From Podarcis muralis (Eukaryota): 64,000 nt of DNA. Below the pieces are notes generated by a model that was not told the origin of the DNA, ran no database searches, and worked only from the letters and a program-made list of their open reading frames with translations. Numbering within the stretch: the first letter of the stretch is position 1; every line of letters begins with the position of its first letter. The stretch spans positions 124,001-188,000 of the forward strand of contig NC_135663.1 in the NCBI RefSeq assembly GCF_964188315.1, read 5' to 3'. Made by a program: the position numbers and the translations under genes. Positions 38,501 to 59,600 of this stretch are shown in pieces.

Positions 38501-41500
38501 ATGGACGCCTCCGCCGCCGCCCCCGTGGCGCCCGACCGGCTCTTCGACGCGCACCGGTGAGGGGGGGGCCTCCGGGGCGGGGGGGCGGCGGGGGGGGGCG
38601 GGCCTCCCTCCCTCGCTCCCTCCCTCTTCCCCGCTGACCCCTCGGCGCCCTTCTCCTTCTCCCCCCCGCAGGCTCCCCGGCGGCGAGGGGCCGCGCCTGC
38701 TGCTCTCGCTGCTCCTCTACGCGCCGGTGGGGCTGGCGCTGCTGCTGCTGCGCCTCTTCATCGGGCTGCACGTCTTCCTGGTCAGCTGCGCGCTCCCGGA
38801 CAGCGCCCCGCGCCGCTTCATCGTGCGCGTCATGTGCTCGGTGCTGGGCGTGCTCGTGCGCCAGGCCGACCCTCGCCAGCGCAGCCTCCGCGCCCGCGTC
38901 TTCATCGCCAACCACGTCACCCACTTCGACCACAACGTCCTCAACCTGCTCACCTCCTGCAACGCGGTGAGCGGGGGGCGGGGGGCGGGGGGGGGGAGGA
39001 GAGGCTGCCCCTCGAGGGGGAGGCAGGAAAGGCCGGGCCGGGGAACAGCGCCAGGGGCCGGGGGCACGGCAAAGGATCCCCCCCCCCCTTGGCACGCTTC
39101 TGCCCCAGGAAATGCGCCTTCCGGGAGGTGCAGAGGCTCAGCCGCCTCCGGGCCTCACGCAATTTCTCCCCTTGCTTCAGAGAGAGGCAGGTCTTGTTAG
39201 CGCAGCCTGTGGCAAGGTAAGAAGCACCCGCTGGATCAGGCCCCTGCTCTCCCACCAGATGCACAAGAGCCCTCGCCCCTCCTCTGGTTTCTGGCATCCA
39301 GAAGTGTCATTGCATCTGACTGTGAAAGCAGAGCCGAGCCATTGTGCTTAGCGCAATGCAGGTCTCTCATTCCCTTTAAAAACCATCCGGGCTGGTTGCC
39401 AGCACTGGCTCCTGCAGCAGGGAGTTCCATAGTTTAACTGTGCACTGCATGAAGAACAACTTTATTTTATTCGTCCTGATTTTTCCAACTCTCAGCCTTG
39501 AATGTCCACCTTTGGGAGTTCACCTTAACGGAATAATCATTGCCATTTGTGTGTGTGTGTGATTGTACGTGTATTCATGTACACAAGAACGGGCCTTTTC
39601 TGGGGTGGCTCCCCATTTGTGAAATGCTCTCTCTAGGGATGTTCGGCTGGAACCTTCATTATACACCTTTAGGCGCCAGGTGAAAATGTTCCTCTTCAAG
39701 CGGGTCTTGGGCCGATTGACCTTTTAAGTCTTGGGGATTATTGGGTTGTCTTTGTTTTTGCTTTTATTGTGTAGTTTGTGATTTTTACGTTGTAACTTTA
39801 TGTTGTGAATTGCTACAGATACAGGGCAGAATGAAATCTTAAGAAATAATAAGAAATAATAATGGATACAGTTTCATGCAGCACATAATTTAAACAATGG
39901 GTTTAGCTCCCGCCAGAGTTTGTGCTGGCCCCCAACTTGGATGGCTTTAAAAGTGGATGAGACAGATTCACAGCAGGGGGGGGGGGGCTCTAGCCCTGAT
40001 GCTGCCCCCTGCCTCTGGGGCAGAAGGCAGCGCATGCATGCCCTTGAATGCTCATGGCCTTGGGATCCCTGGGGGCTGGCTTCCCCAGGGCTGCAGGTCC
40101 CAATCCCCACCAGGGGAGAGCCAGGCCGGCCCTGACGGATTCTCTTCCCAACAGCCCGTGCTGAACGGCACCTCCGGCTTCCTCTGCTGGTCCCGGGGCT
40201 TCCTGGAGGTGGGGGGTGCAGAGAGCCGAGCCGAGCTGCTGGAGTCCCTGAAGGCCTACTCCTCCCAGGGGGGCAACCCGCCCCTGCTGCTCTTCCCCGA
40301 GGAGACGACCACCAACGGCCGCGTGGGTCTCCTGCGCTTCAGGTGGGCAGAGCCTCTGGCCTGGCGCCAGGCACCAGAGAAGATCCCCCGGGATCAGGCC
40401 AAGGGCCGGCCAGCCCACGATCTGGTTCTGATTTTGGCTGACCAGGTGCCTCAGGGGGAAGCCAGCAAACAGTGGGGTGGGGGGAGTCTCCTGCTGAGCG
40501 TTGCCCCACTGACTGCACCCTTCCCTCTCCAGCTCATGGCCCTTCTCCATCTTGGACAGCGTCCAGCCAGTGGCTCTGCAAGTCCAGAGGCCTTTTGTTG
40601 CTGTGGTGAGTCGGGGGGGGCTGTCTATTTGCTGCTGTTAAGCAGAACGCACAGGAACATCCCCCCAGCAATGGGTGTTTGTGGTGGGTGCTTCCTCCCC
40701 CATCCCAAGGGCCAGGCTTGCACTTGCAGCAGCCCCCACCCCTCTTGGCTTTTTACTCTTTTCTTTCTCCCCCCCCCCCCCAAGAGTGTGGCTGACGCCT
40801 CCTGGGTGACAGAGCTGCTCTGGACGTTCTTTGTGCCCTTCACTGTTTATCAAGTAAGGTACTAACAGTCTCTGCTACTTCCTTGCATGGGGGAGGAGGG
40901 GGGGGGCTGGACGGAAGGAGAGGAGAGAGGCTCTCAGAGCAGAAGGGAAGGAAGCCTCTGCCCTTGAGCCCCTCTCTCTGCCTTTGCCAACGGGGGAAGT
41001 TTGGTCCTCGTTTTGGGAAAGGGGAGGCAGGTCACCTGGGTAGCCTGGGGCTTGTCCTCCCCTCTTCCCTTCCTTCCTCCCCAGGTGGCTTCCGCCCATC
41101 GCCAGGCTAGTTGAAGAAACCCGCGAGGAGTTTGCGCTGCGGGTTCAGGAGGTAGGAGCGGAGGGCTTGGGGGGGCGGCATGAAAGACTGACTGGCACGG
41201 CCGTGGTCTTGCATGTTCCTCAGCGGGGGGGTGGGAGGGGGCGTGATGCCCGTGCTGAGGTGCTGCCTCTGTCCGCTCAGGCTGTGTCAGAGCCTGTACT
41301 GGGGAGCTTCCCAGCTAGCCCTGGCCTGCGTCTCTCCTCCCTGCAGCTCCTGGCCCTGGAGCTGGGTGTGGTGTCAACTCGACTCACTGCTGCTGACAAA
41401 GCCGAGCACCTGAAGCGATTGCGCCACAGCCCCTCAGCCCCCTACAGCCCCCCAGGTGAGTGGGGCGGAAGCGGTTCGTCTCCCCTGCCTCCATAGGCCT

Positions 41501-42624
41501 GCTTGCTGGCAGAGCTCCAAGCCCTGGGGGGGCTCCTGCCTGGGCTCTGCCTGCTCCCAGCTCTCTCCTGGTGGGTGGCGAGGGTCTTGCCCACTCTGCT
41601 TAGCAGTAGCTGGCAGGGAGGCAGGGAGGATCCAGGCCACCATGGGGGCTGTGCCCCCCCCCCCCGGCCACTGTGCCTCAGCCGCCCCCTTTCCCCTTGC
41701 CTTCCTTCCTTTCAGCTCCAAGCCAGCCTTCGGGGACCCAGGACCGAGCTTTTCCCAGTGTCGCCTCTGCAGAGGATGTCCGCTGGAGTGGCATGGCTCA
41801 GCGTGTCAAAGAAGTCCTGCCCCACGTGCCCCTGGCAGTCATCCGCAAGGATCTAGGTGCGTGGTGTGTGTGGGGGGAAGCATTTGGATAAGAGCTTGAG
41901 GGGGGATTCTCATACCCAGGAGGGTTGGGGAGGGCAGTAGAAACACAGAATTGCAGCCCTAGTCCAGCCCCTGCAATGCAGGCGTTCCAACTGAAGCGCT
42001 CCTGAGAGAGGATCACGCAGCCTGTGGTCAGTGATCTGGTCTCCTTCTCTCTCTCTTCCAGCTCGGACGAACTGTGTGGATGCGACCATTGCCAATCTCC
42101 TGGAGGGGCGGGTTCCCTTCATCCCCAGCGAGGCGGAGGCAGAGGATTCCTCGGCTGCCCCGTCCGTCTCTGGCGCTCACTACCTCGCCTCTGCTCCCCT
42201 GACCCCGGTATCCAACACCCCCCATCCCAAGGAGGAGGGAGGGAACAGGCGCTGGGGGGCCATGTGGGGGGGGGGCTGAAGAGGCGCTGGGGCTTCTCAA
42301 GGCTGAGCTCCTGCCCCCCCCCTCTCTCTGCAGGCCCCCATGAAGCTCTTTGCCCGGTCCCCAGAGGCAAGGCACCTCTCTCTCCAGGAGCGGAAGCGGC
42401 TGCTGTACGACTACGCCAGGAGGTGAGGCCGGGACCCTTTCCCTGTTGCAGAGGAAGCAAGGGACCCCCCCCCCAGCAGTCTCTCTCTGACCCCCCCCCA
42501 GCCCATCCACGCTTGCTCTGGCTGAGCAGCTCTGTGCCGCCATGTGCTGATGAAAGGCTCCTCTTGCCTTTGCAGGAGATTCATGGAGAAGCATGGGATG
42601 GCGCCGAAGGAGGGGAGCCACTGA
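38501..42624 (+). CDS. AUP1: Ancient ubiquitous protein 1 (lipid droplet/ERAD; acyltransferase-like, CUE, G2BR), 11 exons, 428 aa
   Basis: Exons 38501-38556, 38672-38966, 40155-40342, 40533-40605, 40785-40858, 41085-41151, 41347-41455, 41716-41856, 42062-42207, 42334-42422, 42576-42624. Motifs [54 protein letters not shown] at 42919-42924. Confidence 0.96.
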
Positions 42625-44448
42625 CCAGCTGGTGTTTTCCTTGAGGACTGCTGGCTTGATCAACTCTGGATCTTTGTGGAGGGTTGCTGCGGACACTGCT
42701 GCCCCGCTGGACCTGTGTGGGGTTGGCAGTGTGCCCGTGGCTGCCCTTGAGTGGTGTGCGCCCATCCCGCCTGACTTCTCCGCAGGGCAAGAGGGAGGCT
42801 CCCAGCCCCCACCCCGCCCGCTGCAAGGCCCGGACTCCACATCGCCCTGCCGCACAGCCGGGGGCCCCGACGGCCTGCCTCAGAGTGTGGGTGGGAGGGG
42901 GCAAGCTTTCACTATCAAAATAAACGTTACTCTAATTCTCATCCTCTCGGACGCGCCTTCCTTCGCTGCTGTTGACTCTGCTTGAGAGGCAGCAGAAGCC
43001 CCGCCAAGGGAGACACAACGGGTCCTTGTTCCGCCACCGCAGCTGCTGCTAGGACGGGCCGGGGGGGCCAGGCTGCCTTCCCTCTGGCTCTCCCCTCTGT
43101 GCCCTGGCTCCGGAGGGGGTGGGCCCCTGAGCCACTCAGCTGGCGGGCTGAGCTGTCTCCTGCCTCCAGCCAGGCCCTCCTGTCCTGACCCAGCCTGAGC
43201 CACACGAAGCTCTATCCCAAGTGCTTTTGAGTGGCTGTTTTGTGTGTCCTCGCCGTCTTGCGTCTCTAATTTCTGTTTCTGTGTGGTGAGAGTCTGCTTT
43301 AGCTTTGCGCGCTTTACAGTGGAGGGGCTGCTGGATAGTGGGGTTGGGGGTGATTCTTGCATTGTGAGGGGTGGACTAGATGACTCATGGGCTCCCTTCC
43401 AAAGCCTGACGGCCTTTTATAGCTGCTCTTCGCTTAGCAGGGTGGCTGCTGCTTTCCTTTGGGGCGGCAGTCTTGCCGCAGAATGCAGAGCAGGTGCCCA
43501 AAGGGGACGCCTTTGGATCCTTGAGGAGGGTGGTGGGGCCAGCCCTTCTGCTCCCCCCAGAAAAGAAAGCCCAGCCACTGCATGCTGTTTTCCTTGAGGG
43601 GGGGGGGGTCCATTACAAGCAACCTGAGCCTTGAAAATCACATGGGAGTTGAAAGTGGGCGGTTGTCACTCTGTCCAATTGGCTGCCTGTGCTTTGGACA
43701 AAGGGAACCTTCCTGACCACCTGGGGGGGGGGTCTTAGGCGACCCTGAGGAGGCAAGGGGGTGCTCCCCACACCTGCCAGAAACCAGTGGCTTCGAGTGT
43801 GGCGGGAGGAACTCTGCATCCTTGCTGCCTGTATTCTGGGCATCCTTTCCATGAGCGCTTCCTGCATGAGGGGGCGCTAGACTAGATGTCCCTTGTGGGG
43901 GGTCCCCTTCCAGGTCTCTGAATCAGTGGGGCAGCCTAAATTGTTCAGGTTCCCATCGCCCCGCAGTCGTGAGCAGATGATGCTGCTGCGAGGAGGAGAG
44001 GGGCGAGGAAGGCTGTCTGGGAGACGGGGGCGCGCGGCGCGCTCCGGAGGATGCTCAGCTGTTCCCTTCTGCTCGGCTCGCGGGGTCGGCCCAGGTCAGC
44101 CTCCTCCTCCCGGGCGGGAGATGCGTGCAGCTCGGCATGTCTGGCTGCGCCCCTCCCGGGCGCGCATTCATTCATGGAGCACGTAGCCGGCTACTCTTAA
44201 AGGGGCGACAGGAGGCGGCCCGCACTTGCCTTCCTCCGGCTCCCTCCTTCCGTGGCTTCGGCGGCGCCCCGCTCCTTGAAATACCGAAAGAAACAGAGCA
44301 GGACTAGGACTTCTCTGGATGCAGCCTGGAAGAGCATTCGCCCCTTTTTGCTGCTGCCTCACACTGTGGACTCGCGTGAAGCTTGTGGTCCAGGGAGACC
44401 CCGAGATCCTTTTCACATGCCTGCCAGTGAGCCAGGCGTCCCCCGCCT

Positions 44449-44638: not shown

Positions 44639-44649
44639 CCCGTCCTATC

Positions 44650-44770
44650 TTTGGGCACCTTGTTCTTCCTGCCTAAGTGCAGAAACCAGCATTTGTCCCT
44701 GTTGAAATTCATGTTCTTAGCTTGCGCCCAGTTCTCCAATCTGTTCCGGTCATTTTGAATTCTGATTCTG
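44650..44770 (-). mobile_element. CR1 RT fragment
   Basis: Reverse strand reads QNDRNRLENWAQAKNMNFNRDKCWFLHL, a CR1 ORF2 motif. Confidence 0.75.
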
Positions 44771-45250: not shown

Positions 45251-48134
45251 ATGGAGGCGCCCCGGGAAGACGCCCTGCAGAGTGAGTGGCCCTGGGCGGG
45301 AGGGGGGAGGGAGGGAGGAGAAGCGCGCTCCCGCGCCGGGTCCCTTGCGGGGCCAGACTGGGGTAGGGGCTCTGGGGCTCCCCCCCCCAGCAGCTGCAGC
45401 AGCATCCCCCAGGCGGTGGCGGGGGGCGGGATCCAGTTCGGCCCCTCTAACTGCCTCTTCCCGCCTGCCTGCCCGCTTCCTAGGCTCCTGGGTGGAGGTG
45501 CCCCCACTTGACCTGGAGGAGCCCCCCACGCCGGCCTGTGCGCCCCACCGCGACATGGAGCGGATCCTGCTGGAAGCGCAGCTGGAGATGGAGCCGCCGC
45601 GGGCCGAGGGGTAGGTGGTCGTGGGTAGATGACTCTTTCGTGGGCAGCGGGGTCGGCGGAACTCCTTGCAACTGGCTGTGAGCGCAGCAGGCGAAAGGGA
45701 GGCTCTGCGGTGGACAAGCGGGCGGCGGCTGCTAGCTCCGAAGGGCCGGGAAGCGACGACACCGGGGGGCGGCGGGAGAGCAAGCTTGGACTGCCGGGTC
45801 TCGGGTGAGGGGACGGCAGATCAGCCTCTCGGAGTCAGACAGGCGCTACTGGGCATCCCTGGCTCTTCGCTCCTTCCTTAACCCCTGCTCAGGGCTGCGT
45901 ACCCAGGGGGCGGCCCACTGCCTGGGGGAGGCCAGCTCTTCCTTCCAAGTCCTCCCGCGAGCCTGACTCGACTCCCCCCCCCCCCCCCGGCTATGGGGCT
46001 GCATGAGGGGCTCCTTAGGCTTTCACTGGAGTTGGCATAACTGCGCTCCTAAGCAAATTCCGGTCAGCTCCTTTGAATGCTAGGTAATTATTGCACGGAT
46101 GTTCCCTCAGGACTCGCGGTTCTCTTCCCTTCCCTTTTGGGATGCTCTGAAACGTCAAAGTTTGAACCAAATCGCCTCTCTTGAGATTTGTATTTCTGAA
46201 CTTCTCACTGAGAAATTGGAAAGTCTGGCTGATTTTCTTTGGGCTCCACCTTGCCACACGAACCTGAGGATGTGAACCCCACATCCTGCCATTATAAATG
46301 TACCAGAGCTGGAAGAATCATGGAATCACAGAATTGTAGAGTTAGAAGGGACCTCCAAGGCCCATCTAGTCCAACCCCCTGAAATGCAGGAATCTCAACA
46401 ACATGACTGATGCCATCCAACCTCTGCTTTACAATCTCCAAGGAAGGAGACTCCACCGCCTCCCTAGAGAGTCTGTTCCACTGTCAGCCAGCTCAGAAAG
46501 CTCTTCCTGGGGTTTAGTCACAAGGAGCCTTTGCTGTGTGGGCTCTGGTTTCTACAGCTGCTCCCCCAGAAAGACCGGCCTGGGAGTGGCCACCAGACGT
46601 CTTCCAGGGACTGCCACAGTCAGGACACACAAACCCCCTGCAAGGCTGACCTGGGCTTCTTCTGTGGGTGACAACTCGGCTCCCTTCTCCTGTCTGGGCT
46701 CCATTGGCCAGCCTCTTCACCTGCCCAGGAGGACAGGAGGCTCCTGCCTTCTGAAGGGCTCACCTGAGCATCCTGCAGGCTGTGGACAGGTCTGGCCTGG
46801 TAGAGATTTAGGTCCACTGAGGGCATCAGCCTCTCAAGGGCTTCACAGCAGCTTCTGAGCATGCTCACAAACAGCATGGCAGCAAAATCTCTCTTGTGCC
46901 TGAACACACAGACAGCGAGAGCAATTTCTCACCAGCAGATTCCATTTCTTGTGTTTCCAGCTCCTTCCGTGCACTGAAGGCGCCTGGTGTGGAGGACCTG
47001 AGCCCAGGGCAGGTGAGTGTCAACGCTGAGGTGTGCAAAGGAGCCACCTGGGCCATGGGCTTGTGGTCTTGTGGCCTCAGAATGAGAAGGCGCCAACCAA
47101 ACGGGGGTCTTGAAAGGTTTAATCTCAGGGGTCATTGTGGTGCCTGACCCATGAAGCACCTCAAGTTCCATAGACAAGGTGTGTTCACACCCACCCACAA
47201 GACATGCCCAGATGGTTGCCCAGGTGATATGCCCCCCTTCATCCTTAAAAAAAATTATGGGGTGCTGCACTTTCTCTTTGCAGAGGGAAGACGCTGAAGG
47301 GTCTGTCCAGCTGGGGACCCTGCCCTGGTCGTGGCCCAGCCCCCCTGAGCACCAAAAGTAAGGATGGCTCTTCACTGGCTTTCCCCGGGGGTCCTGGCTT
47401 CAGGCAGCCCCCCCAAAAACTCTCACCCCACTGCTTGCTCCACTTTGGACTCTGTCTGTCTGTCTCTCTGCAGGGAGCTGGCCTGCCTGCCCCCTGCGTG
47501 TGCCCCCCTGCTCAGCCCAGTTCTACACAGGAGGAGGGGGTTGCGGGACCCCCAGCTGCTGCTTCTGGTCATCCCCTCTCTGCTGCTCAGCCACGTCTTG
47601 GCCTTTGGCCTTGGGTGAGTCGGGGGGGGAGGGGGAGGCAACGAAGCAGGCACAGTTAGCGCCTCCAAACCTCTTGCCTGGACTCCTCTCTCACACACAG
47701 CAGTGGCCCACCAGCTGAGGAGAAATGGGATCGTGGCAAAACATGGGGATGGGGGTTGATTTTTCTCTCCCTTTACGGAAACACCCTTAATTCTGCCCAG
47801 TGCAGGCAGCCCCCTATAGTGTCTGTCTCCTCCCCCTCCCCTCCAAAACGTCTTGAGACCTGCGGTGAAGTCTCTGAGCACCTGGCTGGCTGCTGCAGAA
47901 GCGGATGCTGGATTAGATGGGACTCCTCTGGCCTGATCCAGCAGCCTCTTCTCATGTTCTTCTGCTGCTCAGAGCCTTCCTTGCCTCTCCCACTTGCCTG
48001 GAGGAGCGTAGCAAGAGAGGAGCTGAGGCCTGGCCTCTCCTGAGCAAGCCCCTCACTCACTGCCCTCTTCCTCTCCTCTCTCCAGCATTTGTATCGGGAA
48101 GCGTCTGGCTGCCTCCCCATCAAGCAGCCTGTGA
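45251..48134 (+). CDS. BNIP3/BNIP3L(NIX)-family paralog, 6 exons, 157 aa
   Basis: Exons 45251-45281, 45484-45610, 46961-47012, 47284-47357, 47474-47614, 48086-48134 total 474 nt, all GT-AG, phases 1,2,0,2,2. Protein MEAPREDALQSSWVEV...DMERILLEAQLE...LPWSWPSPPEHQKE...VIPSLLLSHVLAFGLGICIGKRLAASPSSSL versus BNIP3 SWVEL / DMEKILLDAQHE / WDWSSRPE / [29 protein letters not shown] at 48615-48620. Confidence 0.9.
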
Positions 48135-49158
48135 GAAGACGCGAGGGGCCTCCTGGGACACCCCACCCCCCACCCCAGCTCCCCTTTCTCCACGCTCCAC
48201 ACCAAACTGTTGCACGGCCCCGTCTTGCCCAAGACCACCTGAGAAGCGGTGCAGAGCCCGGCATCAAACCTGATACCCTCACCCACCCACTTCCGTGTAC
48301 ACAACCTTCCTTGCCTCTGCTGTGGGGCCCAGCCTTCATAAAGACTTAGCCCCAAAGCCCCCTCTCCACTTTCCCTGCTGCAGTGGGGCAGAGGGGATTG
48401 GGTTGCTGGACTCCAGTGGCGGCGGCAGCAGCTCCCTTCCTCCCCCTCCTCTCCCAGCTAGCAGCTGGGAGTTAGAGCCTGGACACATCTGGAAGGCCAC
48501 ACCTGGAGGTTGTGCTACCCCCCCCCCACCATGCCAATCCAAGGAGCTTCGGAAAGACAATCTGCAGCAAAGCATGGCAGCTGATCTACTGGAACATGCC
48601 GTTGCTTCATTCAAAATAAATCCTGTTTTTCAAAATCCTAAAAAAGTCTACCAGGCATTTATTTTTAATGTATGGGGGAGAGTAGTTGTGCTTTGGGTGT
48701 GGAGTGAGGGGCACCATGTCCTGGCAATGCCATGGGGTAAGAAGCCCCCTCAAATATGTTATTGGTGGAGCCAAAGGGACCTCAGACCCTAGGAGTTGGC
48801 TCCTGTGTGGCTGCCTTGGATTGAGGCCTCCTCCGTCACTGGGGGGAGCACCCCATGTCACTGGGGGGAGCTGCTGCTCTCAGCCTGGCTGGGGGCACCT
48901 CTCTTTTCTCCAGTCCCTGGCTGGACCCCACACTGCTCTTATTTTTGTCTATTTGGTTTTCAAAAGTTTACATACTTTAACATCTAATTTATCCAGTGTT
49001 TGTTTTCTGGGGGGCGCAGCGGTACGATTTGAACTATAAAATTGTGATTTTCTTGAGTCAAAATGAGAGTACCCCTCAACATTTTTTTTAATAGAAAAAA
49101 GCACTGAATTTATTCACTGACTTCCCCTTCCCCTTCCATGATGTTCTATATTTATCCT

Positions 49159-49368
49159 GTTACAGATAGGTAGCCGTGTTGGTCTGCCATCGTCAAAACA
49201 AAAAAAATTCCTTCCAGTAGCACCTTAAAGACCAACTAAGTTAGTTCTTGGTATGAGCTTTCGTGTGCATGCACACTTCTTCAGATACACAGATACACAT
49301 GCATGCACACGAAAGCTCATACCAAGAACTAACTTAGTTGGTCTTTAAGGTGCTACTGGAAGGAATTT
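49159..49368. mobile_element. Penelope-like element remnant: 70-bp perfect inverted repeat with 12-bp TSD
   Basis: Arms 49204-49273 and 49300-49369 are exact reverse complements; TATATTTATCCT at 49147-49158 and 49369-49380. Sequence resembles reptile Penelope-like pseudo-LTRs (gtagcaccttaaagacc...agctttcgtg). Confidence 0.8.
49251..49288 (-). ncRNA. Minimal type I hammerhead ribozyme motif (Penelope-associated)
   Basis: Minus strand GUAU-CUGAAGA-A-GUGUG(CAUG)CACAC-GAAA-GCUC/AUAC: stem I GUAU:AUAC, core CUGANGA and GAAA, palindromic AGCU for helix III. Confidence 0.65.
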
Positions 49369-51269: not shown

Positions 51270-51275
51270 TTTATT
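51270..51275 (-). terminator. Poly(A) signal of the INSYN2-family gene
   Basis: AATAAA on the minus strand about 240 nt past the stop at 51515. Confidence 0.6.
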
Positions 51276-51514
51276 GAGACCTCCTCGGATACAGTGTGTG
51301 TGTCTTCCCTTCTCTCCCCCATCCTTTCATTGGGGGGGGGGGGTGCTCTGCAAGTTAAACTGGACAGATCTGAACAATAAAAAGGCTGGTGCAATCCCTC
51401 CATGCTGCGGCTCTGTGGCAGGTTGACTGGTGTGGACTGATGGGGGGAGGCAGCCCCCTCACCCCATGGCTCCTTGGGGAGGGAGACCCCCGGACCCTTC
51501 TGGGCACGGCACCA

Positions 51515-54500
51515 TCACAGGAACCAAAAACACTTTCGCCGGGACTTCTTGGCCTCCGCTTTCACCACGGGCAGATTCAGCGTTGGCGACGGCTCCTGGT
51601 GGCTTGGCGTGGCAGCTCGCGTGGCCACCGGGGGGCTGTGGCTCAGCTCAGGCTCAATGGTGCTCAGCACCTGCTGCAAACGCCCCTCCTGCTTCCGGAA
51701 ATCATGTTCCACGCTGCGGGGAGGCGGGGAGCAAGTCAGAGGGAGGCGTCTCCCAAGGAACCCCACTCAGCCAACGCTCGTGATTGGGGACAGAGATGGG
51801 GGTCTGGCTGGGCTGCCCCCATCCCTCCTGGGGGGCCGTGGGAGCTGGTGCAGAGGAGGCAGGTCAGCTGGCAGGAGCCTGGGGAGGCCGCCAATGGGAG
51901 CCCGTCTGCCTCCGCCGACCCTGGCATGTCTCACCCGTCGCCGCAGCGGCAGAGACAGACCCGTCAATCCCAATTAGCACTGATGCCTTGTGCGAAACAC
52001 ACAGGCAGGAGGCCAGAAGGAGCCGGCGGGCGGGCAGGCAGGCAGGCAGGCAGGCAGGGTGGCGGGGAGAGGAAGAGGGCCCAGTCCTGCCAGGGAGGCT
52101 CTGCACAGCCAGCCAGCCAGACCCCCCACCCCCAAAACAGCCTCCGAGGGTCAATGGAAACGTAGGGGAGGAACCCAGAGAAAAGGCTCCAAGGAGCAGA
52201 GGCTGCCGGTCTCTCCTTCCTTGGAGGTTTTTAAACGGAGGTCGGGAGGCCGTCTGCCAGGGATGCTTGCGGGGGGCTGGTCTAGAAGACCCTCAGGGGT
52301 CCCTTCCAACTCTACAAGTCCAGGATTCTTTGGTCTGTGGAAGATGTCTTCCTTGTGCCAAACAGCCCTCTAGGACTCTGATTCTATGGAACCCAGAGCG
52401 CAGCCCACCTCTGCCCCCGGCAAGGAACTGGCAGAGACACCCGCCTCTCCCTGGGCATGGAGGCCCTTTCACCATCCTGGCTCACAGCCCTCCTCTAACC
52501 CCTCCTTAACAAATTGTCCAGTAGCACCTTAGAGACCAACTCCGTTTGTTCTGGACAGAAACTTCCGTGTGCATGCACACTTCTTCAGGTAATAGAAAAC
52601 TTAGACCCAGAACAAACGGAGTTGGTCTCTAAGGTGCTACTGGACAATTTTTAAATTTATTTTGACTGCGTCAGACCAACATGGTTACCTACCCTCCTTA
52701 ACACCCACTGAAGCAAGGGGCACCATAGATAGATTGGTGCCCAGGGCTGGGGGGGGGGGGCTCCTGGCATCCCTCCCCAGCTTCAAGGCAGTGGGAGTCA
52801 TTGGCTGACTCAGCGTCCCAGGACTAAAGCGAGGGAGGAGCAGGGCCAGAGACGCAGCCTCTGTTCTCGTGCCATGCTGGGGGGGGGGGGCTGCCACTGC
52901 AGGGACTCTGTCCTCCTGAGAAACTCCGGCAGGAGCAGACAGGCTGTGGCGGCCTGTCATTCTTCGCAGGCACCCTTCATATCACGTCTGCCAGAAACGC
53001 TTGCCTCCGCTTCCCTCAAGAACGTGATTGGGGCAGGCAGGCAGGCGGGCGGGCATGGGAGCCCTTGCCAGCTCCCTTGGGACTTCTCCAGCACCCAAGA
53101 CCTCTGGCAGCCCCCAGGGCACCCTGAACCCAGCCCACCAGCATCCGGCTGGCCACTGCGAGAGCACGATGATGGACTAGGTGGTCCACTGGCCTGATCC
53201 AGCAGCCACACTCTTCTTGTGCCACCCAACTCTATGAATGTATGAAATGTCAGTGTCAAGAATCATAGAATTGGAGAGTTGGAGGGGACCTCAGGGGTCA
53301 TCTCGTTCAACCCCCTGCAATGCAGGAATCTCAGCTAAAGCATGCAAGACAGGTGGCCCTCCAAGCAAGGGCCCAGGTGTCTCTAAGCCGGACTGGGGGG
53401 CAGCCTCACCCCCTGCCCCTGTATCTGGTATTCAGAGGCAGAACACAGCCAATGGGGCTGGTAGCCATTTGCGGCTGTCAGCTCCATGGGTCGGGGCCCT
53501 GTGGGGCTGCCCCAGCCTTGCAGTCGTTTCTGGGGTATGGTCCAAGCTCCCCACAGGCCCTGCAGAGTCTGCTTCTGCCCCATTGCGCCCCCATCAAAAT
53601 CCACTGCCCCTGCAGTGCCAGGGAGCCCCAGGATCAGGCCCAGGGCTCACTTAGTCCAGCCTCCTGTTCTCACAGTGACCAGCCAGATGCCTTGGGAAAC
53701 CCACAAGCAGGATCCGGGCGCAAGAGCAGCCCTTCCTCCTCCTGCAACTGGCCCTCTGAAGCCTGGCCACCTCCAGGGAAGGGGCTCTGCTGGAGAAGTG
53801 GGTGGTCTGGGGGGGGGAGAAGGTGAGAGGAAAATCTGCTGGGCAGGGAGGAGAGCGGTCTGCCTGAGACCCAGCAGGACCCCCAGACTGGAAAGCAGCC
53901 AAAAGACGAAGGAGCTGGGTGGGCTTAGCCTGAAAGTGGGTTGATGGAGGTGGGGAGATGCTGGCCCTTTAGGGAGGGGGGGTCCTCTTCACCCCAGGCC
54001 AACGATGCAGCCTTCCTCTCTCTCCAGAGTCCCCTTTGCCCAGGGTCATCACATCAATAATACTGAACAGGCGTACATTTTATGTTGATGTGAAATGTGG
54101 AGGTCAGGAGCCGATGTCTGGGCTGCCGGTGGATCTGTGGCCGGCAGCCGAGAGCAGCCGAGGTGGGGGAAGCCAGGGGGCACCCCCAAACCCCACCCCA
54201 CCCCCGCTCCCAGGCCCCTCCTACCTGTAGATGATGCAGGCACAGTCCCGGCACGTCCCGCAGTTGGTGGTGTCCTGCCCTGTCCGGTAGGACTGCCGCC
54301 TGAAACGGAGCAGAAGGAGCCCATGAGCAGAAGGCCCAGGCGCCCCCTCCCTGCCTGGTCGCAGGGGCCCCCTTTGGTGCCAGGGGGGCACAAGCAGCAA
54401 TGCCCAAAGGGCATCTGGTCAAGCAGCAGGGACCAGGGGGAGGGGAAGCATCAGGGCTGGCTTGGGGGGCCAGGAGACCCCGGGAGGTCTCAGGGAGGGA

Positions 54501-56657
54501 AGCGCAAGGCAGGCAGCCAGGCCAGGACTCAGGCCTCACAGCGCAGAGGCCGCCCCAAGGCAAGGGGGCTGGCCCCACAGTGGCACTGCTTCGGCTTCCA
54601 AAGTGAGCAGGCACAGTGCCAGGCGATGCCAAGGCTGGCTTGTGGCCCGCAGAACCTGCTGCTGCCACCATAAAAATGCTCCATCATTTAAAGCGCAGTC
54701 AAACCAAAAGGTCGTGTTTTGCTGGACAGCTGAAGCTCCCAGCATTTCCCTGTGCGTTTGCTGGAGAGAACTCTGAGAGAGACAGTCCCACGGTGCCCAG
54801 GCGGGCAGAGGGCACAGCCATAGAGCTCTTCTCCTTGCCTGCCTGGGCACATGCTCTCGTTTTTGTCTCTTCATCCCCAAGCCAGAAATGGGAGAACAGC
54901 TGCGAAGTCTGAGCTCTAATGTTCAGACACCATTTTAAGCTAAACTGAAGTCTGCCTCTCAAATTGGCTCATTTGGCTGGAGCCTGGTGCTGAAAACAAA
55001 GGTCACAGGTTCGATCCCCGTATGGGATAGCTGCATATTCCTCCATTGCAGGGGGTTGGACTAGATGACCCTCAGGGTCCCTAGAGGCTCGACAAATTTT
55101 GTCTCTGTAACTGAATTACCATTTTAAGCCTGCCTGAATAAAGCTGCTGTTATTCTGCCTCAGAAACTCTGAGTAGATGTTATTTTTATCTCTTACAAGA
55201 CTGTTTGTGTGATTATTGTTTTAAAAGGGGGAAATATCAGGAGAATCCAGTCTGCCTTAAAACATCCTAGATTATTAAACGGAAAGGCTAAAACTCGCCC
55301 ATCTAAGCAGCCAAAGGGATCTCACTCTGCAGAACTCACAAGTGTGAGGAAGAAGAATATCTAATAAATATAGCCTCTCCTGGCATCTATGCAACATCCC
55401 TGGCTCCAAAGAGTCAAGGCGGCTCTAGCCTGGCCAGTGGGGGCTCCTTGGGCAACCCAGACCCCCCCCAGACCCGCCTCACCCATCTCGCTGCGCCTCC
55501 TTCTTCTCCAGATCCTGAATGACATCGAGTAGCACCTTGATGGTTCGTTGGCTGGTCTCCAGCACCCCCTCGAGGGACTGCAGCTGGGAGTGGATGTCAC
55601 CCACCCACCCGGGGAGGTCCTGAGATGCTGGCGGGGGCGCCCTCTGCGCGGCAGCCACAGACACCAGCTGCAGAAGGTGGTCCTGCCCGCGGGGAAACGT
55701 CTCCCCAGGTCCAGCGGAGAGGCAGGTCTCAGGGGGGCAGCTGCGACCGGAGGAGGGCAGAAGGGGGTCCGGAGGCTTCTGGGAAGGCGTGGGGGCTGGG
55801 GGGTGGGCCTGAGTGGTGCTGAGGCTCCCTGGGGAGGCTGCAGGCGCTGCTGGTTTTCCTGACTTAGGGGGCCCTGCTGTGGGAAGCAGGAAGGCAGAGG
55901 TGGGGTCTTCGGTGGGGAGGCCCTGAGCAAGGGGGCAGGGGGCAGGGATGCCCCTCTGGGGGGCACAGGGAGGGGCTCTCGAGGCCTGCTCAGAGGGGGG
56001 TGGGCACAGCCAGGGGGCGCCAGAGCTGCTGCAGCTGCTTGGTGTGCCATGGGGCTGCGTGGAGGAGGGGGCACAGTGCTTGCGCTGGGAAGAGCAGCTG
56101 GCCGAGAGACACGGGGCCCCCCGCCCCGGGTACGGGGGGCATATCCCCCGGGGAGCTGGCAGCCCGGGGCACAGGGTGGCAGGAAGTCTGGGGCACTGCT
56201 GGGCGTGGGGTAAGGCGAGGGAGCAACCAAGGGCAGGAAGGCTGGCGGTGCCCCCCAGGGGCGGATCCTGGCTGCGGCCCACTGCACAGGGCGCCCCCTC
56301 CTGGGCGAGGTCGCAGGAGCTCTTGCTGCGGGTGGGCCGCTGCAGGCTGGGTGACGTCTGGCTGGCGGTGCTGATGCCAGTCGCCCCGTGGGGATCCGGC
56401 AGGGCGAGCAGCAGGCGGGGCCCGGATTGGGGCCAGCTCCGCCTGGCGCAGTTTGCGGCAGAGGCACGTGGGAGGTGGCTGCCCAGGGGCTCCTCTTCGC
56501 CCTCCTCTAGGTCCTTGAAGCGCACCTGCTGGGCGCGGTGGCGGCGGCGCTGCAGGCGGTCCTCAGCACCCGGCGAGTCGCGCTTGAGCAGCACGGAGCG
56601 GACCCCGGTGACAGCCTTCTCTTGCCCGGCCTCCGGGGCTGCCTCCTGGCTGGCCAT
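51515..56657 (-). CDS. INSYN2/FAM196-family paralog (INSYN2B-like), 3 coding exons, 482 aa
   Basis: Exons 56657-55483, 54299-54225, 51713-51515 (phase 2-2, GT-AG); ATG in GCTGCCATGG; 5' UTR acceptor at 57077. Motifs [87 protein letters not shown] match recalled INSYN2A/B. Confidence 0.9.
52511..52691. mobile_element. Second Penelope-like remnant: 44-bp perfect inverted repeat with 11-bp TSD, opposite orientation to the 49.2 kb copy
   Basis: Arms 52511-52554 and 52607-52650; CCCTCCTTAAC at 52500-52510 and 52692-52702; hammerhead core degenerate (GAAA changed to GGAA). Confidence 0.8.
54960..55081 (+). mobile_element. tRNA-derived SINE with CR1-type tail (POM/Squam1-like)
   Basis: A-box-like TGGCTGGAG, B-box GGTTCGATCCC (55008-55018), then the same cattgcagggggttggactagatgaccctcagggtccc tail found throughout the window. 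Confidence 0.75.
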
Positions 56658-59600
56658 GGCAGCCCCTTTGCCCCGCCAGGGGGGCGTCACAGCCTCCTGC
56701 CCCGCATGACCGCAAGCCGTTCCCCAGAAAGCGTCGATTCGGCTGCCCCCTCGGTCGGGGCGCAAAGCATCTCTCCCGTGGGTCCTGCTGCCTGGGGCTC
56801 AGCCTCAGCGACTCCCAAGGGGGCAGCCGGTGCCTCATGGCTGGAGGAGGCCTGGCCTTTGCCCCCCAGCCGGCAGGAACCCCATGGCCTGCTCTCCCCC
56901 CTCCCCCCTCTCTAGGGTCCGTCCCTGGCCTCTGAGGGCCTCTCTCTGGGCCGGGAGAAGGGAGGGGGGAGAAGGGAGCCCATCCTGCTCACGGCTGCTG
57001 CTTCCGCTTCCCGAGGGTCGGTCACTTGTGGGGCCAGCAGGCACAGCGCCAGCCCATAGCCTCCCTGGGCAACGGACCTGCAGAGAGAAGAGAGGAGATG
57101 AATGGGTGGAAACCCGTTCCAGTTATAGTCCACACTACAACCAGGGCTAAGAAAAAGTAATACAGGAGTAATGAAAATAAGAGAAGTGTTGAGCTGCAAG
57201 AGACCCTCAAAGGACGTCCAGTCCAACCCCCTGCGATGCAATGCAGGAATCCCTGACTTGTCCTATAAACTGGCCTTAACGCAGAGCAGATGGGGAGTCA
57301 TAAGAAGCAGCCTTGCTAGCCCAGGCTCACATCAAGTGGCCCAGGAGCCGAGGAGAGAGGAGAGTCTGCAGCTGGGTGAGGCTACCAGAGTGGGGCCTCC
57401 TAGTCCAGCACCCTGTTCCCCTCTGGCCAACCAGATGCCCTCAAAGGGAAGCCCTGAGAGCAGCAGCCCTCTTCCACTCTTGTTCTCCACCTTTCTAAGA
57501 TAGACTGATGCTATCCATGGAGGCTCCACTTAGGAATCACAAGAACCTAAAGGGAGCTCTGTAGGAAGAAGCCCTTTAGGAAGAACCTAAAGGGAGCTCT
57601 GTAGCAGCTGGATCAGGCCACTAAAGGGGCTGACCATTAAAGAGCAGCTGTGGGGGTGGGGGGTTGCATCAGAGTAGGGCTGAGGGGGGAGGGCTTAACC
57701 CTTTCCTTTCCATTCACTTTTCTTCTGAAATAACTCCCCAAGCCTGTCACCCACCCATCCCACCCAAGGTCTGGTGAAACAGACATTTGTGGAGGACGAG
57801 AGGGCGATCGATTGAGGGCCACTAGCCAGGATGCCGTGCTCTGCCTCCACAGTCGGAATCCAGTGGCAGGAGGGGAGCGCTGCCATGTGCTCAGCTCCTG
57901 CCTGGGGGGTTCCCACAGGTCGGCCCCTGTGAGGACAGGATGCTGGACTCGATGGGCCCCCGGCCTGACCCAGCAGGCTCTTCTGGTGTTCTTAAAGCCC
58001 CTCCCAAACGTGCCCAGTTTCCTTCCGGAGGCTCCCACAACCCCCTCTGCCACGTGGCCACCCCCTAAAAACACCCCTCTCCTGTCCCTCTGCCACCTCC
58101 AGTCTCAGGCAGGATCACAAAACACAAAGCGACAAGCTCTGGTCTTTGGTGCTGCTGCTGCTGCCTCTGTTTGGAGAGAGAGGGGGGGGAGAGAGGGAGA
58201 GGGAAAGGGGGGGGGAGAGAAGGGGCCCTTCAGCGTAAACAGGCCAGGAACGCCAGCCAGGCAGAAGCCACAGCTAAGAATAGCAGCCTGGCCTTCATGG
58301 GGAGCAGGAAGAGGAGAGGAGGATGAGAAGCCGTCCCACACACCCACCGCCTGTGTCGGCCTCCAAGAGGAGCATCAGGGAGGGGACACCCCCAAAGAGC
58401 CTTTGCTGTGCCCCCTCAAACCGACCAGGGGATCCATCTCCCAGCCCAGAGGCAGGAGGCGGCCACAGCCTCTCTTTGCCACAGAGAGCATTCCCCGGCT
58501 GGCGTCCCTTTCCCCCCGCCACTCAGTTTCCCAGCTGACCTCCAAGTGGCTGTGCCGGGGGGGGGGGAGGCACCTTTGGGAACTGGGGGGAGAAAGCAAA
58601 AGGTAGCAAGCCTGTGAACATTTTACATGGTTGCCATTATTATCAATGGCTCAATGGTCCCAGGATATAGAATGACAGAAAGGTCATCCAGACCAGCCCC
58701 CCCCCCTTGCAGGAATCACAACTGATGCCATGATTCTGACAAATGTCCATCTGACCTCTGCTTAAAAACTGACAACAAAGGAAAGGAAGGTTACAGCCAC
58801 TTAAAAATGCAGTATTGAAAAGAGTTTAAGATGAATTACTGTGGGATCTAGGTATCTACCTTCAACAGAGAGCCAGTGGTTAGTGCTGGACTGGGACCTG
58901 GGAGAGACTAGGGTTTGAATCCCTCCTCAGCCAGGAAACTCCTTGGGGGATCTTAGGGGTCCGTCAATGCTCCTCTCAGCCTGACCTCCCTCACAGGGTT
59001 GTTGTGGGGATTAAATGAGGAAGGGAGAGCCATGCACCTGCCCTCCTGAGCTCCTTGTAGAAAAAGGTGGGGTGGAGATTCAATACAGAAATTAAACCCC
59101 AGGTGTCATCGAGGGCAGAGTAAATGGTGTGTCTTCAGCATGCAATGGAACCTGTCCCACAGGACTGTCAGGTGCCATGAAAACAGGATGGCGGACTCGA
59201 TGGCCGCTGGCCTGATCCAGCAGAGCTCTAAGAAGGCCTAAAGAAGGTGCCAGGAGCCCCCTCTGTAAGGTGGGAATTCCCAGAGAGCCAAAGGAGAGCC
59301 CTTTAGCCGGGGGGGGGGGGGAGCCCCCAAAGCCGTGCCCTGTGCACAACACTCTCCCTTCCTGCAGCCGACTTGGCAGAGAGGAGGGAGAAGGAAGGGC
59401 AGGAGGGGTGTCCCAGGCAGGCCAATGCCTCCTGGCAAGAGGGCCAGGCCAGAAGAGCCCCCTTCTGCCCAGCTGCAGTGCCTCCCCCCCCCCACTGTGC
59501 CATCACTTCTCCCCAGCAGGAAGGGAGTTGCCAGCTCAGCACAGCCGCCCAGACTTTCTCCCGCACTGCTAACAAGCAAAGTTTCCAACTGCTGAGCGAG

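What the first reader, a model, noticed from the sequence alone, without database searches (positions are those of the whole stretch)
38501..57077. Two adjacent retained ohnologs replace DQX1 after AUP1: a fossil of the ancestral paralogon
Seen: gene order AUP1(+), BNIP3-like(+), INSYN2-like(-), with no DQX1 helicase motifs recognisable in the 21 kb after AUP1. Established: paralogs of this block co-occur in human (10q: LOXL4, BNIP3, DOCK1/INSYN2A; 8p: LOXL2, DOK2, BNIP3L, DOCK5; 5q35: DOK3, DOCK2/INSYN2B). Inference: the 2p13-type segment kept its BNIP and INSYN2 copies in squamates and both were deleted together on the mammalian lineage. It also places a mitophagy receptor beside the HTRA2/AUP1 organelle quality-control pair.
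Basis: inference. Interest (0 to 1): 0.7.

Follow-up and report, generated by a model that had tools for sequence, protein, structure and literature searches.

The report
Lost-in-mammals BNIP3 and INSYN2 paralogs
Next to AUP1 the wall lizard carries a third BNIP3/NIX-type mitophagy-receptor gene and a third INSYN2 gene, both old vertebrate paralogs kept by sharks, fishes, birds and reptiles, with no mammalian copy found in any search run here.

Summary
The window is Podarcis muralis. After LOXL3(+), HTRA2(-) and AUP1(+, 38501-42426) come a six-exon BNIP3-family gene (+, 45251-48134) and a three-exon INSYN2/FAM196 gene (-, 56657-51515). The 21.6 kb after AUP1 show no helicase, DOCK or homeobox signal.

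The ohnolog reading is largely right but needs three corrections.

1. Neither gene is special to squamates. Both orthogroups run from chimaeras and sharks to birds and lizards. No mammal appeared among the hits.
2. The ancestral block had a third gene. In a cuckoo, AUP1(+) and BNIP3-X(+) are followed by a DOCK-A gene(-) with INSYN2-X nested antisense inside it. A chimaera and a shark show the same BNIP3-X / DOCK / INSYN2-X layout. In Podarcis and Pogona the DOCK host is not found and INSYN2-X is inverted, so the lizard locus is itself rearranged.
3. Nothing shows that the pair "replaces" DQX1, whose position in this lizard is unknown.

BNIP3-X is transcribed and spliced. Its membrane anchor and tail are under purifying selection, but its central family motif has decayed in sauropsids.

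RefSeq already models both genes. The papers I found describe only BNIP3 and BNIP3L. The scan's own notes had flagged both genes separately in this window.

The parts
31529..31639 (+). Last lysyl-oxidase domain exon of LOXL3 (context)
   Evidence: Pfam Lysyl_oxidase 46.7 bits on ORF 31364-31801, residues 56-92. The name LOXL3 comes from the gene order and from PMC2446394.
34339..37101 (-). HTRA2-type serine protease exons: Trypsin_2 exon at 36601-37101 and PDZ exon at 34339-34593 (context)
   Evidence: Pfam Trypsin_2 47.3 bits and PDZ_6 31.9 bits.
38501..42426 (+). AUP1 coding region, ATG at 38501, stop at 42424-42426
   Evidence: ORF reading. Weak CUE hit. Exon-by-exon tblastx matches of 47-142 bits to the CUE-annotated neighbour genes of cuckoo L002 and Pogona L005.
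44065..44209 (+). Non-coding block conserved with Pogona, about 1.1 kb upstream of the BNIP3-X ATG; promoter-like, with two RCGTG cores and a TATA-like TTAAAG
   Evidence: blastn 81% over 150 nt and alignment A4. A promoter role is inferred, not shown.
45251..45281 (+). BNIP3-X coding exon 1 (ATG at 45251)
   Evidence: tblastn of P0006. Splice joint 45281>45484, GT..AG, in contigs of two runs.
45484..45610 (+). BNIP3-X exon 2: LIR-type motif SWVEV and the DMERILLEAQ block
   Evidence: 100% tblastn match, joints, motifs.
46961..47012 (+). BNIP3-X exon 3
   Evidence: 100% tblastn match. Joints 45609>46960 and 47008>47280, GT..AG, with the cut movable by 1-4 nt.
47284..47357 (+). BNIP3-X exon 4: decayed family motif (LPWSWPSPPEH in place of DWxWDWSSRPEN)
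   Evidence: ORF 47155-47358, P0006 residues 71-94, alignment A3. Joint 47357>47474 is also seen in raw RNA reads.
47474..47614 (+). BNIP3-X exon 5: transmembrane helix with the S-H...A-x-x-x-G-x-x-x-G pattern
   Evidence: tblastn match, motif scan. pN 0.044 against pS 0.355 versus Pogona.
48086..48619 (+). BNIP3-X exon 6: tail ICIGKRLAASPSSSL, stop at 48132-48134, 3' UTR to at least 48619
   Evidence: tblastn match. A 929-nt spliced contig of run X3 covers 48085-48619.
55482..56657 (-). INSYN2-X exon 1 (392 codons), ending in the conserved coiled-coil-like block
   Evidence: 100% tblastn match of P0007. Pfam FAM196.
54227..54298 (-). INSYN2-X exon 2: Cys-rich block NCGTCRDCACIIY
   Evidence: 100% tblastn match. 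Conserved with cuckoo, Albula and shark at 73-96%.
51515..51715 (-). INSYN2-X exon 3 with its stop codon
   Evidence: 100% tblastn match. Conserved with Pogona.
57078..64000 (.). Stretch beyond INSYN2-X with no recognisable gene (no helicase, DOCK or homeobox)
   Evidence: Pfam scan of all ORFs of 50 aa or more, motif scan. No gene is called there in the public annotation of locus L001.

Best explanation
The stretch holds two real genes of the wall lizard. Both are the 2p13-type (LOXL3/AUP1/TLX2-paralogon) members of two small vertebrate families.

BNIP3-X is a third paralog beside BNIP3 and BNIP3L/NIX. Ensembl and UniProt call its fish orthologs zgc:73226. INSYN2-X is a third paralog beside INSYN2A and INSYN2B. 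Both most likely date from the early vertebrate genome duplications.

The ancestral jawed-vertebrate layout was BNIP3-X (+), then a convergent DOCK-A family gene (-), with INSYN2-X nested antisense in one of its introns. This mirrors DOCK1/INSYN2A and DOCK2/INSYN2B. AUP1 adjacency is shown only in amniotes. The whole module appears to be absent from mammals, where AUP1 abuts DQX1 instead. In squamates the DOCK host was lost and INSYN2-X was inverted, leaving the order seen here.

Likely function (inferred): BNIP3-X is a tail-anchored outer-mitochondrial-membrane protein. It dimerises through its transmembrane helix and recruits LC3/GABARAP through its N-terminal W-x-x-V motif. In sauropsids its central family motif has decayed. 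INSYN2-X presumably acts like the INSYN2 inhibitory-synapse scaffold proteins.

Shown: gene structures, transcription and splicing of BNIP3-X, family membership, the range of species, and synteny. Inferred: the 2R timing, a single loss event in mammals, and all biochemical functions.
For: Identity and structure:
- RefSeq models of P. muralis map exon by exon (92-100% identity; exon 4 of BNIP3-X read).
- both proteins pass their Pfam cut-offs.

Expression:
- All five BNIP3-X introns appear as GT..AG joints in assembled contigs of two independent studies.
- Intron 4 is also seen in raw stranded RNA reads.

Constraint:
- Podarcis and Pogona share DNA similarity at the exons and a few short blocks, not across the introns.
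- dN/dS is about 0.36 over 113 codons. The transmembrane exon has pN 0.04 against pS 0.36.

Age of BNIP3-X:
- Relatives carrying the same tail signature (IGKRLAAS...L) occur in squamates, birds, crocodilians, axolotl, coelacanth, sturgeon, teleosts, sharks, rays and chimaera.
- The ML tree puts the BNIP3 (99/98) and BNIP3L (99/99) clades apart from these sequences.
- AU tests reject joining the sauropsid genes with BNIP3 (p 0.0009) or BNIP3L (p 0.028).

Age of INSYN2-X:
- 110 hits, essentially one per species. Their tree follows the species tree from chondrichthyans to squamates. No mammal is among them.

Synteny:
- Cuckoo: AUP1(+), BNIP3-X(+), DOCK(-, 1849 aa), with INSYN2-X(+) inside it.
- Callorhinchus: BNIP3-X(+), then DOCK(-) 5.8 kb downstream.
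- Heptranchias: BNIP3-X(+) and INSYN2-X(+) 0.54 Mb apart on one chromosome, the latter inside a DOCK(-) of 1872 aa.
- Albula: both genes on the same strand, 45 kb apart.
- Pogona: the same order as Podarcis, with no DOCK.

Identity of the DOCK neighbour:
- The cuckoo DOCK exons match the chimaera neighbour at 82% in the best exon (49 aa).
- They are about equally distant from human DOCK2 and DOCK5.
- Chicken Dock2 lies on chromosome 13 with Tlx3, whereas Aup1/Htra2/Loxl3 lie on chromosome 4 (PMC2446394).
Against: - Monophyly of all BNIP3-X sequences is present in the best tree but has only 24/24 support. The sauropsid genes sit on a long, compositionally odd branch.
- The groups for the AU tests were named after the tree had been seen.
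- NCBI names the fish and chimaera genes plain 'BNIP3'.
- AUP1 was not found within 10 kb of BNIP3-X in chimaera, shark, Albula or stickleback. Direct AUP1 adjacency is therefore shown only in amniotes.
- No true INSYN2A/B or DOCK1 sequences were available, so the separateness of INSYN2-X and DOCK-X rests on indirect evidence: hit lists, names, PDB comparisons and the literature.
- Absence from mammals rests on hit lists, not on a search of mammalian genomes.
- In a box turtle no DOCK gene is called around INSYN2-X either. DOCK loss may therefore be wider than squamates, may be independent in turtles, or the annotation may be incomplete.
Confidence: 0.78

Rival explanations
1. Mis-assigned orthology. 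The fish, shark and chimaera 'X' genes would be the true BNIP3 orthologs, as NCBI names them. The fast-evolving sauropsid genes would join them only through long-branch or compositional artefact. The sauropsid pair beside AUP1 would then be a later amniote or sauropsid duplication or translocation.
For: - Support for X monophyly is only 24/24.
- The sauropsid branch is long (0.5 plus 0.75-0.8) and its composition deviates.
- NCBI names the fish genes 'BNIP3'.
- AUP1 was not seen within 10 kb of BNIP3-X outside amniotes.
Against: - The same three-gene layout, BNIP3-X(+) / DOCK(-) / INSYN2-X(+) nested, is found in cuckoo, chimaera and shark.
- The INSYN2-X tree follows the species tree across all these groups.
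- The shared tail signature IGKRLAAS...L differs from that of BNIP3 and BNIP3L.
- The BNIP3 clade (99/98) excludes the X genes, and AU tests reject the alternatives.
- In gar, coelacanth and teleosts, bnip3 proper lies in a different, ppp2r2d-jakmip3-dpysl4 neighbourhood (PMC6142374).
Confidence: 0.1
2. BNIP3-X is a decaying gene in squamates. It would be transcribed but no longer work as a BNIP3-type receptor, on its way to the loss already completed in mammals.
For: - The central family motif DWxWDWSSRPEN is degraded.
- The Pfam score is 45 bits, against 130-180 bits in fishes, sharks and axolotl.
- Exon 2 has pN about equal to pS.
- Depth in the two raw RNA runs is very low.
- Isoforms that skip the transmembrane exon are annotated in Lacerta and Zootoca.
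Against: - The open frame is intact, with the same six exons, in lacertids, agamids, a cordylid and Anolis.
- All introns are correctly spliced.
- The transmembrane and tail exons are strongly constrained: pN 0.04-0.09 against pS 0.36-0.49.
- The LIR-type motif and the LLEAQ block are retained.
Confidence: 0.1
3. Squamate-specific insertion or rearrangement brought unrelated copies of BNIP3L and INSYN2B next to AUP1.
For: INSYN2-X is inverted and lacks its DOCK host in Podarcis and Pogona, so some rearrangement did happen in squamates.
Against: - The cuckoo has BNIP3-X directly after AUP1, followed by DOCK and INSYN2-X.
- Chondrichthyans and a teleost keep the linkage.
- The trees place the lizard genes with those orthologs.
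Confidence: 0.02

Closest known systems
BNIP3 and BNIP3L/NIX (Pfam PF06553), hypoxia-induced tail-anchored mitophagy receptors of the outer mitochondrial membrane
   Same: - Passes the family HMM.
- N-terminal W-x-x-V/L LC3-interacting-type motif preceded by Ser.
- DME.ILL.AQ block.
- C-terminal transmembrane helix with the S-H and A-x-x-x-G-x-x-x-G dimerisation pattern.
- Short basic tail encoded by a separate last exon, in a six-exon gene.
   Different: - A separate clade with its own tail signature (IGKRLAAS...L).
- It lies in the AUP1/LOXL3 block, not in the PPP2R2D-DPYSL4 or PPP2R2A-DPYSL2 blocks.
- In squamates and birds the central DWxWDWSSRPEN motif is degraded, and the protein is short (157 aa).
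- No mammalian ortholog was found.
Zebrafish zgc:73226 and its teleost orthologs (unnamed BNIP3-family gene; NCBI labels them 'BNIP3')
   Same: They share the lizard gene's tail signature, and the best tree keeps them with it on one side of a branch (support 24/24).
   Different: - The fish proteins keep the full family motif and score 170-180 bits against Pfam.
- The link to AUP1 is not seen within 10 kb in stickleback or Albula.
INSYN2A (FAM196A) and INSYN2B (FAM196B), inhibitory-synapse proteins nested antisense in DOCK1 and DOCK2
   Same: - FAM196 HMM match of 186 bits over the C-terminal third.
- The N-terminal VRSVLLKRDSP...QQVRFKD block.
- In bird and shark the gene is nested antisense in a DOCK-A gene, like its two paralogs. 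The nesting of INSYN2A and INSYN2B is recalled from human gene maps, not tested here.
   Different: - A third orthogroup with no mammal among 110 hits.
- In the lizard it stands free with no DOCK host, and is inverted relative to BNIP3-X.
- The first 350 residues do not align to the Pfam profile.
The four Lbx/Tlx (NK-linked) paralogons of vertebrates (Wotton et al. 2008, PMC2446394)
   Same: LOXL3, HTRA2, AUP1 and DOK1 mark the Lbx2/Tlx2 paralogon. LOXL and DOK have paralogs on the other three. That paper places DOCK2 on the Tlx3 paralogon.
   Different: That paper does not use BNIP3, DOCK or INSYN2 as markers, and states that AUP1 occurs at one locus only. The copies of BNIP3, DOCK-A and INSYN2 on the Lbx2/Tlx2 paralogon are not described there.

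Membership tests
BNIP3 family (PF06553) | Whole protein passes the curated Pfam threshold | tested here: met
   P0006 scores 44.9 bits against a cut-off of 26. Single exons do not reach it.
BNIP3 family (PF06553) | N-terminal LC3-interacting motif W-x-x-L/V | tested here: met
   SSWVEV in exon 2, conserved in all X orthologs that have an N-terminus. Binding itself was not tested.
BNIP3 family (PF06553) | Central conserved motif DWxWDWSSRPEN-PPKEF | tested here: not met
   The lizard has LPWSWPSPPEH-QKEL and birds are further degraded. Fish, shark and axolotl X proteins keep the motif.
BNIP3 family (PF06553) | C-terminal transmembrane helix with the S-H and A/G-x-x-x-G dimerisation pattern, plus a short tail | tested here: met
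   LLLSHVLAFGLGICIGKRL.... This exon is under strong purifying selection.
BNIP3 family (PF06553) | Outer-mitochondrial-membrane location and mitophagy activity | not testable with these tools
   Needs cell biology.
INSYN2 / FAM196 family (PF15265) | Whole protein passes the curated Pfam threshold | tested here: met
   P0007 scores 185.9 bits against a cut-off of 27, residues 352-482 on profile positions 365-489.
INSYN2 / FAM196 family (PF15265) | Nested antisense within an intron of a DOCK-A gene | tested here: not met
   - No DOCK exon or Pfam DOCK hit in 42.4-64 kb.
- No DOCK is called in loci L001 or L005.
- The feature is met by the orthologs in cuckoo and shark.
2R ohnolog of the LOXL3/AUP1 (Lbx2/Tlx2) paralogon | Forms a clade separate from its paralogs that includes both cartilaginous and bony vertebrates | tested here: inconclusive
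   - BNIP3-X: excluded from the BNIP3 and BNIP3L clades, but X monophyly has only 24/24 support.
- INSYN2-X: a species-tree-like orthogroup from sharks to lizards, but INSYN2A/B references could not be included.
2R ohnolog of the LOXL3/AUP1 (Lbx2/Tlx2) paralogon | Same position in outgroup genomes | tested here: met
   - Cuckoo: AUP1, BNIP3-X, DOCK with INSYN2-X inside.
- Chimaera, shark and Albula keep the BNIP3-X / DOCK / INSYN2-X linkage.
- AUP1 adjacency itself is shown only in amniotes.
2R ohnolog of the LOXL3/AUP1 (Lbx2/Tlx2) paralogon | Absent from mammals (secondary loss) | tested here: inconclusive
   No mammal is among the X-type hits. Mammalian genomes were not searched.
DQX1 (DEAQ-box helicase) | Helicase motifs or domains between AUP1 and the end of the window | tested here: not met
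   No DEAD, Helicase_C, HA2 or OB_NTP_bind hit among 270 ORFs, and no motif set in six frames.

The most novel reading that the evidence does not exclude
The jawed-vertebrate ancestor carried a complete fourth module in the LOXL3/AUP1 paralogon (shown directly beside AUP1 only in amniotes): BNIP3-X, a fourth DOCK-A exchange factor, and INSYN2-X nested inside it. This completes a 1:4 set for DOCK-A (DOCK1, 2, 5, X) and 3-of-4 sets for BNIP3 and INSYN2.

Mammals lost all three genes. Squamates lost only the host DOCK and set the nested gene free by an inversion. Most non-mammalian vertebrates, zebrafish included, therefore have an unstudied third BNIP3/NIX-type mitophagy receptor that could mask phenotypes of bnip3 and nix knock-outs.
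Probability: 0.55. Interest if true: 0.6.

Novelty: new member of a known kind. Interest (0 to 1): 0.5.

Why it matters
- It adds three marker families (BNIP3, DOCK-A, INSYN2) to a well-studied vertebrate paralogon, and they show a clean 2R pattern.
- It shows that the 'two-gene' view of the BNIP3/NIX family, as stated in the fish literature I could read, misses a third clade present from sharks to birds. That bears on the interpretation of mitophagy knock-outs in zebrafish, Xenopus-type and chicken models.
- It offers a natural case of a nested gene that outlived its host gene (in squamates).
- It does not reveal a new kind of molecule or mechanism, and both genes are already modelled in RefSeq.

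Tried and rejected
- Pfam on single BNIP3-X exons gave nothing. One call failed because a piece contained stop codons. Only the full RefSeq protein passes.
- The word-index search with exon 2 found only the lacertid cluster. The exhaustive representative search was needed to reach further.
- The tree with the mixture model was killed by the memory or time limit. It was rebuilt with LG+G4.
- Protein P0125 (a Callorhinchus isoform) was not on record for the contig look-up. Isoform P0196 worked.
- tblastx of bird, turtle and shark loci against each other was swamped by CR1/LINE reverse-transcriptase fragments and proline-rich low-complexity matches. Only hits filtered by score were used, and the search for DOCK exons next to INSYN2-X in the turtle locus was abandoned.
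- The 10-kb flanks of BNIP3-X in chimaera, Albula, stickleback and shark showed no AUP1.
- The Atlas look-up only confirmed the FAM196 family.
- Literature searches for zgc:73226, a third BNIP3 paralog, or INSYN2/DOCK nesting found nothing specific.
- I considered that the AUP1-linked DOCK might be DOCK2. I rejected this because it is no closer to human DOCK2 than to DOCK5 and because chicken Dock2 lies on another chromosome (PMC2446394). DOCK1 could not be compared, since no DHR-2 chain of DOCK1 came up in the PDB search.
Spliced models were handled exon by exon, or through the RefSeq proteins that the tools returned.
- No human contig was used. Human DOCK2 and DOCK5 appear only as PDB chains inside the tool's output.

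Full report
**What is there**

The window is from the common wall lizard, Podarcis muralis. The long minus-strand ORF at 55482-56765 is 100% identical to RefSeq LOC114604513 of that species. The RefSeq BNIP3-like protein XP_028600487.1 (P0006) maps onto the window exon by exon.

- A lysyl-oxidase C-terminal exon lies on the + strand near 31.5 kb.
- An HtrA-type protease with Trypsin_2 and PDZ exons lies on the - strand at 34.3-37.1 kb.
- AUP1 lies on the + strand, from an ATG exactly at 38501 to a stop at 42424-42426.

**The BNIP3-family gene (here BNIP3-X)**

It has six coding exons: 45251-45281, 45484-45610, 46961-47012, 47284-47357, 47474-47614 and 48086-48134. They sum to 157 codons plus the stop.

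All five introns appear as GT..AG joints in assembled contigs of two runs from different studies. One 929-nt contig covers exons 2-6 and 0.5 kb of 3' UTR. The exon 4-5 joint is also seen in raw stranded RNA reads, at low depth.

The whole protein passes Pfam BNIP3 at 44.9 bits against a cut-off of 26. It keeps these features:
- the W-x-x-V LC3-interacting-type motif (SSWVEV);
- the DMERILLEAQ block;
- the transmembrane helix with the S-H and A-x-x-x-G-x-x-x-G pattern;
- a short tail encoded by the last exon.

The central family motif DWxWDWSSRPEN is degraded to LPWSWPSPPEH.

Against Pogona, DNA similarity is confined to the exons and a few short blocks. A simple Nei-Gojobori count over 113 gapless codons, summed exon by exon, gives dN/dS of about 0.36. 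The transmembrane exon is strongly constrained (pN 0.04, pS 0.36). Exon 2 is hardly constrained outside its motifs. That alignment is gapless and slightly off in exon 2, which inflates pN there.

**The INSYN2-family gene (here INSYN2-X)**

It has three coding exons on the - strand: 56657-55482, 54298-54227 and 51715-51518, with the stop at 51515-51517. Pfam FAM196 scores 185.9 bits over the C-terminal third.

**No DQX1**

I translated every stop-to-stop ORF of 50 aa or more on both strands between 42.4 and 64 kb (270 pieces) and scanned each against Pfam. Only FAM196 (three exons) and a weak BNIP3 match appeared. There was no helicase, DOCK or homeobox domain. A six-frame motif scan of the whole window found no DEAH/DEAQ motif set.

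**How old are the two genes?**

BNIP3-X:
- An exhaustive HMMER search with the lizard protein returned squamate orthologs first (Pogona, Phrynocephalus, Sceloporus, Hemicordylus, Anolis).
- Next came a set of proteins sharing its tail signature IGKRLAAS...L. They come from birds, crocodilians, axolotl, Scleropages, stickleback, Triplophysa, Callorhinchus and lamprey.
- A profile search added sharks, rays, sturgeons, coelacanth and many teleosts. UniProt labels the fish genes 'Zgc:73226', and NCBI labels them 'BNIP3' or 'BNIP3-like'.
- In an ML tree of 61 family members, BNIP3L (99/99) and BNIP3 (99/98, including zebrafish bnip4) form well-supported clades that exclude all of these.
- The sauropsid genes form a long-branched group (85/99). 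In the best tree it sits with the other X-type genes on one side of a branch, though with only 24/24 support.
- Forcing the sauropsid genes to join BNIP3 is rejected (AU p 0.0009). Forcing them to join BNIP3L is rejected more weakly (p 0.028). The groups were defined after the tree had been seen.

INSYN2-X:
- The word search returned 110 FAM196 proteins, essentially one per species, from chondrichthyans, ray-finned fishes, a caecilian, a salamander, turtles, birds and squamates. None was from a mammal.
- Their tree follows the species tree, as expected for one orthogroup.
- True INSYN2A/B sequences were not retrieved, so the separation from them is indirect. The indirect evidence is the '-like' names, the absence of mammalian hits, and the different genomic host.

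**Synteny, the decisive part**

- Cuckoo (Phaenicophaeus curvirostris): AUP1(+), BNIP3-X(+), then a convergent DOCK gene (-, 1849 aa, with the DOCK_N, C2 and DHR-2 lobe A-C domains; SH3_2 only weakly). INSYN2-X(+) lies inside it, antisense.
- Chimaera (Callorhinchus milii): BNIP3-X(+) is followed 5.8 kb downstream by a convergent DOCK gene (-, 1834 aa).
- Shark (Heptranchias perlo): BNIP3-X(+) and INSYN2-X(+) lie 0.54 Mb apart on one chromosome. INSYN2-X lies antisense inside a DOCK gene (-, 1872 aa).
- Bonefish (Albula): the two genes are 45 kb apart on the same strand.
- Pogona: the order is as in Podarcis, AUP1(+), BNIP3-X(+), INSYN2-X(-), with no DOCK called.

The ancestral layout is therefore BNIP3-X, convergent DOCK, and antisense-nested INSYN2-X on the same strand as BNIP3-X. 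This parallels what I recall for DOCK1/INSYN2A/BNIP3 on human 10q26.

The squamate state is derived in two ways. INSYN2-X is inverted. The conserved DHR-2 exons that are obvious in the cuckoo locus have no counterpart in the lizard window. In a box turtle no DOCK gene is called around INSYN2-X either. I could not tell whether that reflects real loss or incomplete annotation.

**Which DOCK is it?**

Three DHR-2 exons of the cuckoo gene score about equally against human DOCK2 and DOCK5 chains in the PDB: 53/53, 77/68 and 71/72 bits, with about 70% identity in the best exon. The same cuckoo exon is 82% identical to the chimaera neighbour. Chicken Dock2 lies with Tlx3 on chromosome 13, whereas Aup1, Htra2 and Loxl3 lie on chromosome 4 (PMC2446394). 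This points to a fourth DOCK-A paralog, but DOCK1 could not be compared.

**Comparison with what is known**

The four Lbx/Tlx paralogons, with LOXL and DOK paralogs and DOCK2 on the Tlx3 copy, are established (PMC2446394). That paper does not use BNIP3, DOCK or INSYN2 as markers. A trout paper that reviews BNIP3 family history recognises only BNIP3 (ppp2r2d-jakmip3-dpysl4 block) and BNIP3L (dpysl2-ppp2r2a block) as the products of vertebrate genome duplication (PMC6142374). I found no paper on zgc:73226 or on a third clade. Both genes are, however, already modelled in RefSeq.

The finding is therefore a new member of known families and a refinement of a known paralogon, not a new kind of system.

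Four parts are not supported or not tested:
- Retention is general among non-mammals, not a squamate feature.
- The lizard locus is rearranged, not a pristine fossil.
- 'Replacement of DQX1' is not shown.
- A single joint deletion in mammals is untested.

**Function**

Function remains inferred from family features. BNIP3-X is most likely a tail-anchored, dimerising outer-mitochondrial-membrane receptor that binds LC3/GABARAP. Its central motif is relaxed in sauropsids.

- Spliced models were searched exon by exon by reference, or through the RefSeq proteins returned by the tools. I did not build or submit a joined sequence.
- The scan's earlier notes on this window had already flagged a third BNIP3/NIX gene and a free-standing INSYN2 paralog. 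I tested both here.

Noticed in passing
L002:12962-21971, all of L004, L007:29536-33730, all of L010: Cuckoo, chimaera and shark carry a full-length DOCK-A family gene (1834-1872 aa) convergent with BNIP3-X and hosting INSYN2-X. It looks like a fourth DOCK-A paralog beside DOCK1, DOCK2 and DOCK5. It was not found in the lizard window or the Pogona locus.
   Followed up: partly
window 44065-44209: A non-coding block 81% identical to Pogona, about 1.1 kb upstream of the BNIP3-X start codon. It holds two RCGTG cores (hypoxia-response-element-like) and a TATA-like CTCTTAAAGG. It may be the promoter. The motifs are short and could occur by chance in GC-rich DNA.
   Followed up: partly
proteins P0001, P0003, P0117 (Lacerta agilis, Zootoca vivipara): RefSeq isoforms join exon 4 directly to exon 6 and so lack the transmembrane exon while keeping the tail. 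If real, they would encode a soluble BNIP3-X.
   Followed up: no
window 46200-46400 and 49000-49400: Depth in the RNA-type runs jumps to thousands, with many loose ends and strand-switch joints. These are interspersed repeats expressed from many copies elsewhere, not part of the two genes.
   Followed up: no
window 44659-44763(-), 46409-46489(-), 60440-60550(-), 35517-35642(+): Fragments of CR1/LINE-type reverse-transcriptase ORFs that match similar fragments in the bird, turtle and shark loci. They dominate translated cross-species comparisons.
   Followed up: no
window 61900-63000: A very GC-rich stretch with long overlapping ORFs on both strands (up to 321 aa) and no Pfam match. It looks like a CpG island, perhaps the promoter or first exon of a gene lying beyond the window's end.
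   Followed up: no
window 51906-51988 and 51219-51285: Two short blocks, 86% and 78% identical to Pogona. One lies in the last intron of INSYN2-X and the other just past its stop codon. They may be regulatory or UTR elements.
   Followed up: no
alignment A3 and the tree: BNIP3-X evolves much faster in birds and squamates than in fishes, sharks and axolotl (Pfam 37-76 bits against 130-180). Its amino-acid make-up is deviant, in a window that is 55-69% GC over most of its length. GC-biased substitution may contribute.
   Followed up: partly
L009 (Terrapene carolina triunguis): The turtle INSYN2-X gene spans 20 kb and no DOCK gene is called over it. Either turtles also lost the host gene or the annotation misses it.
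   Followed up: partly
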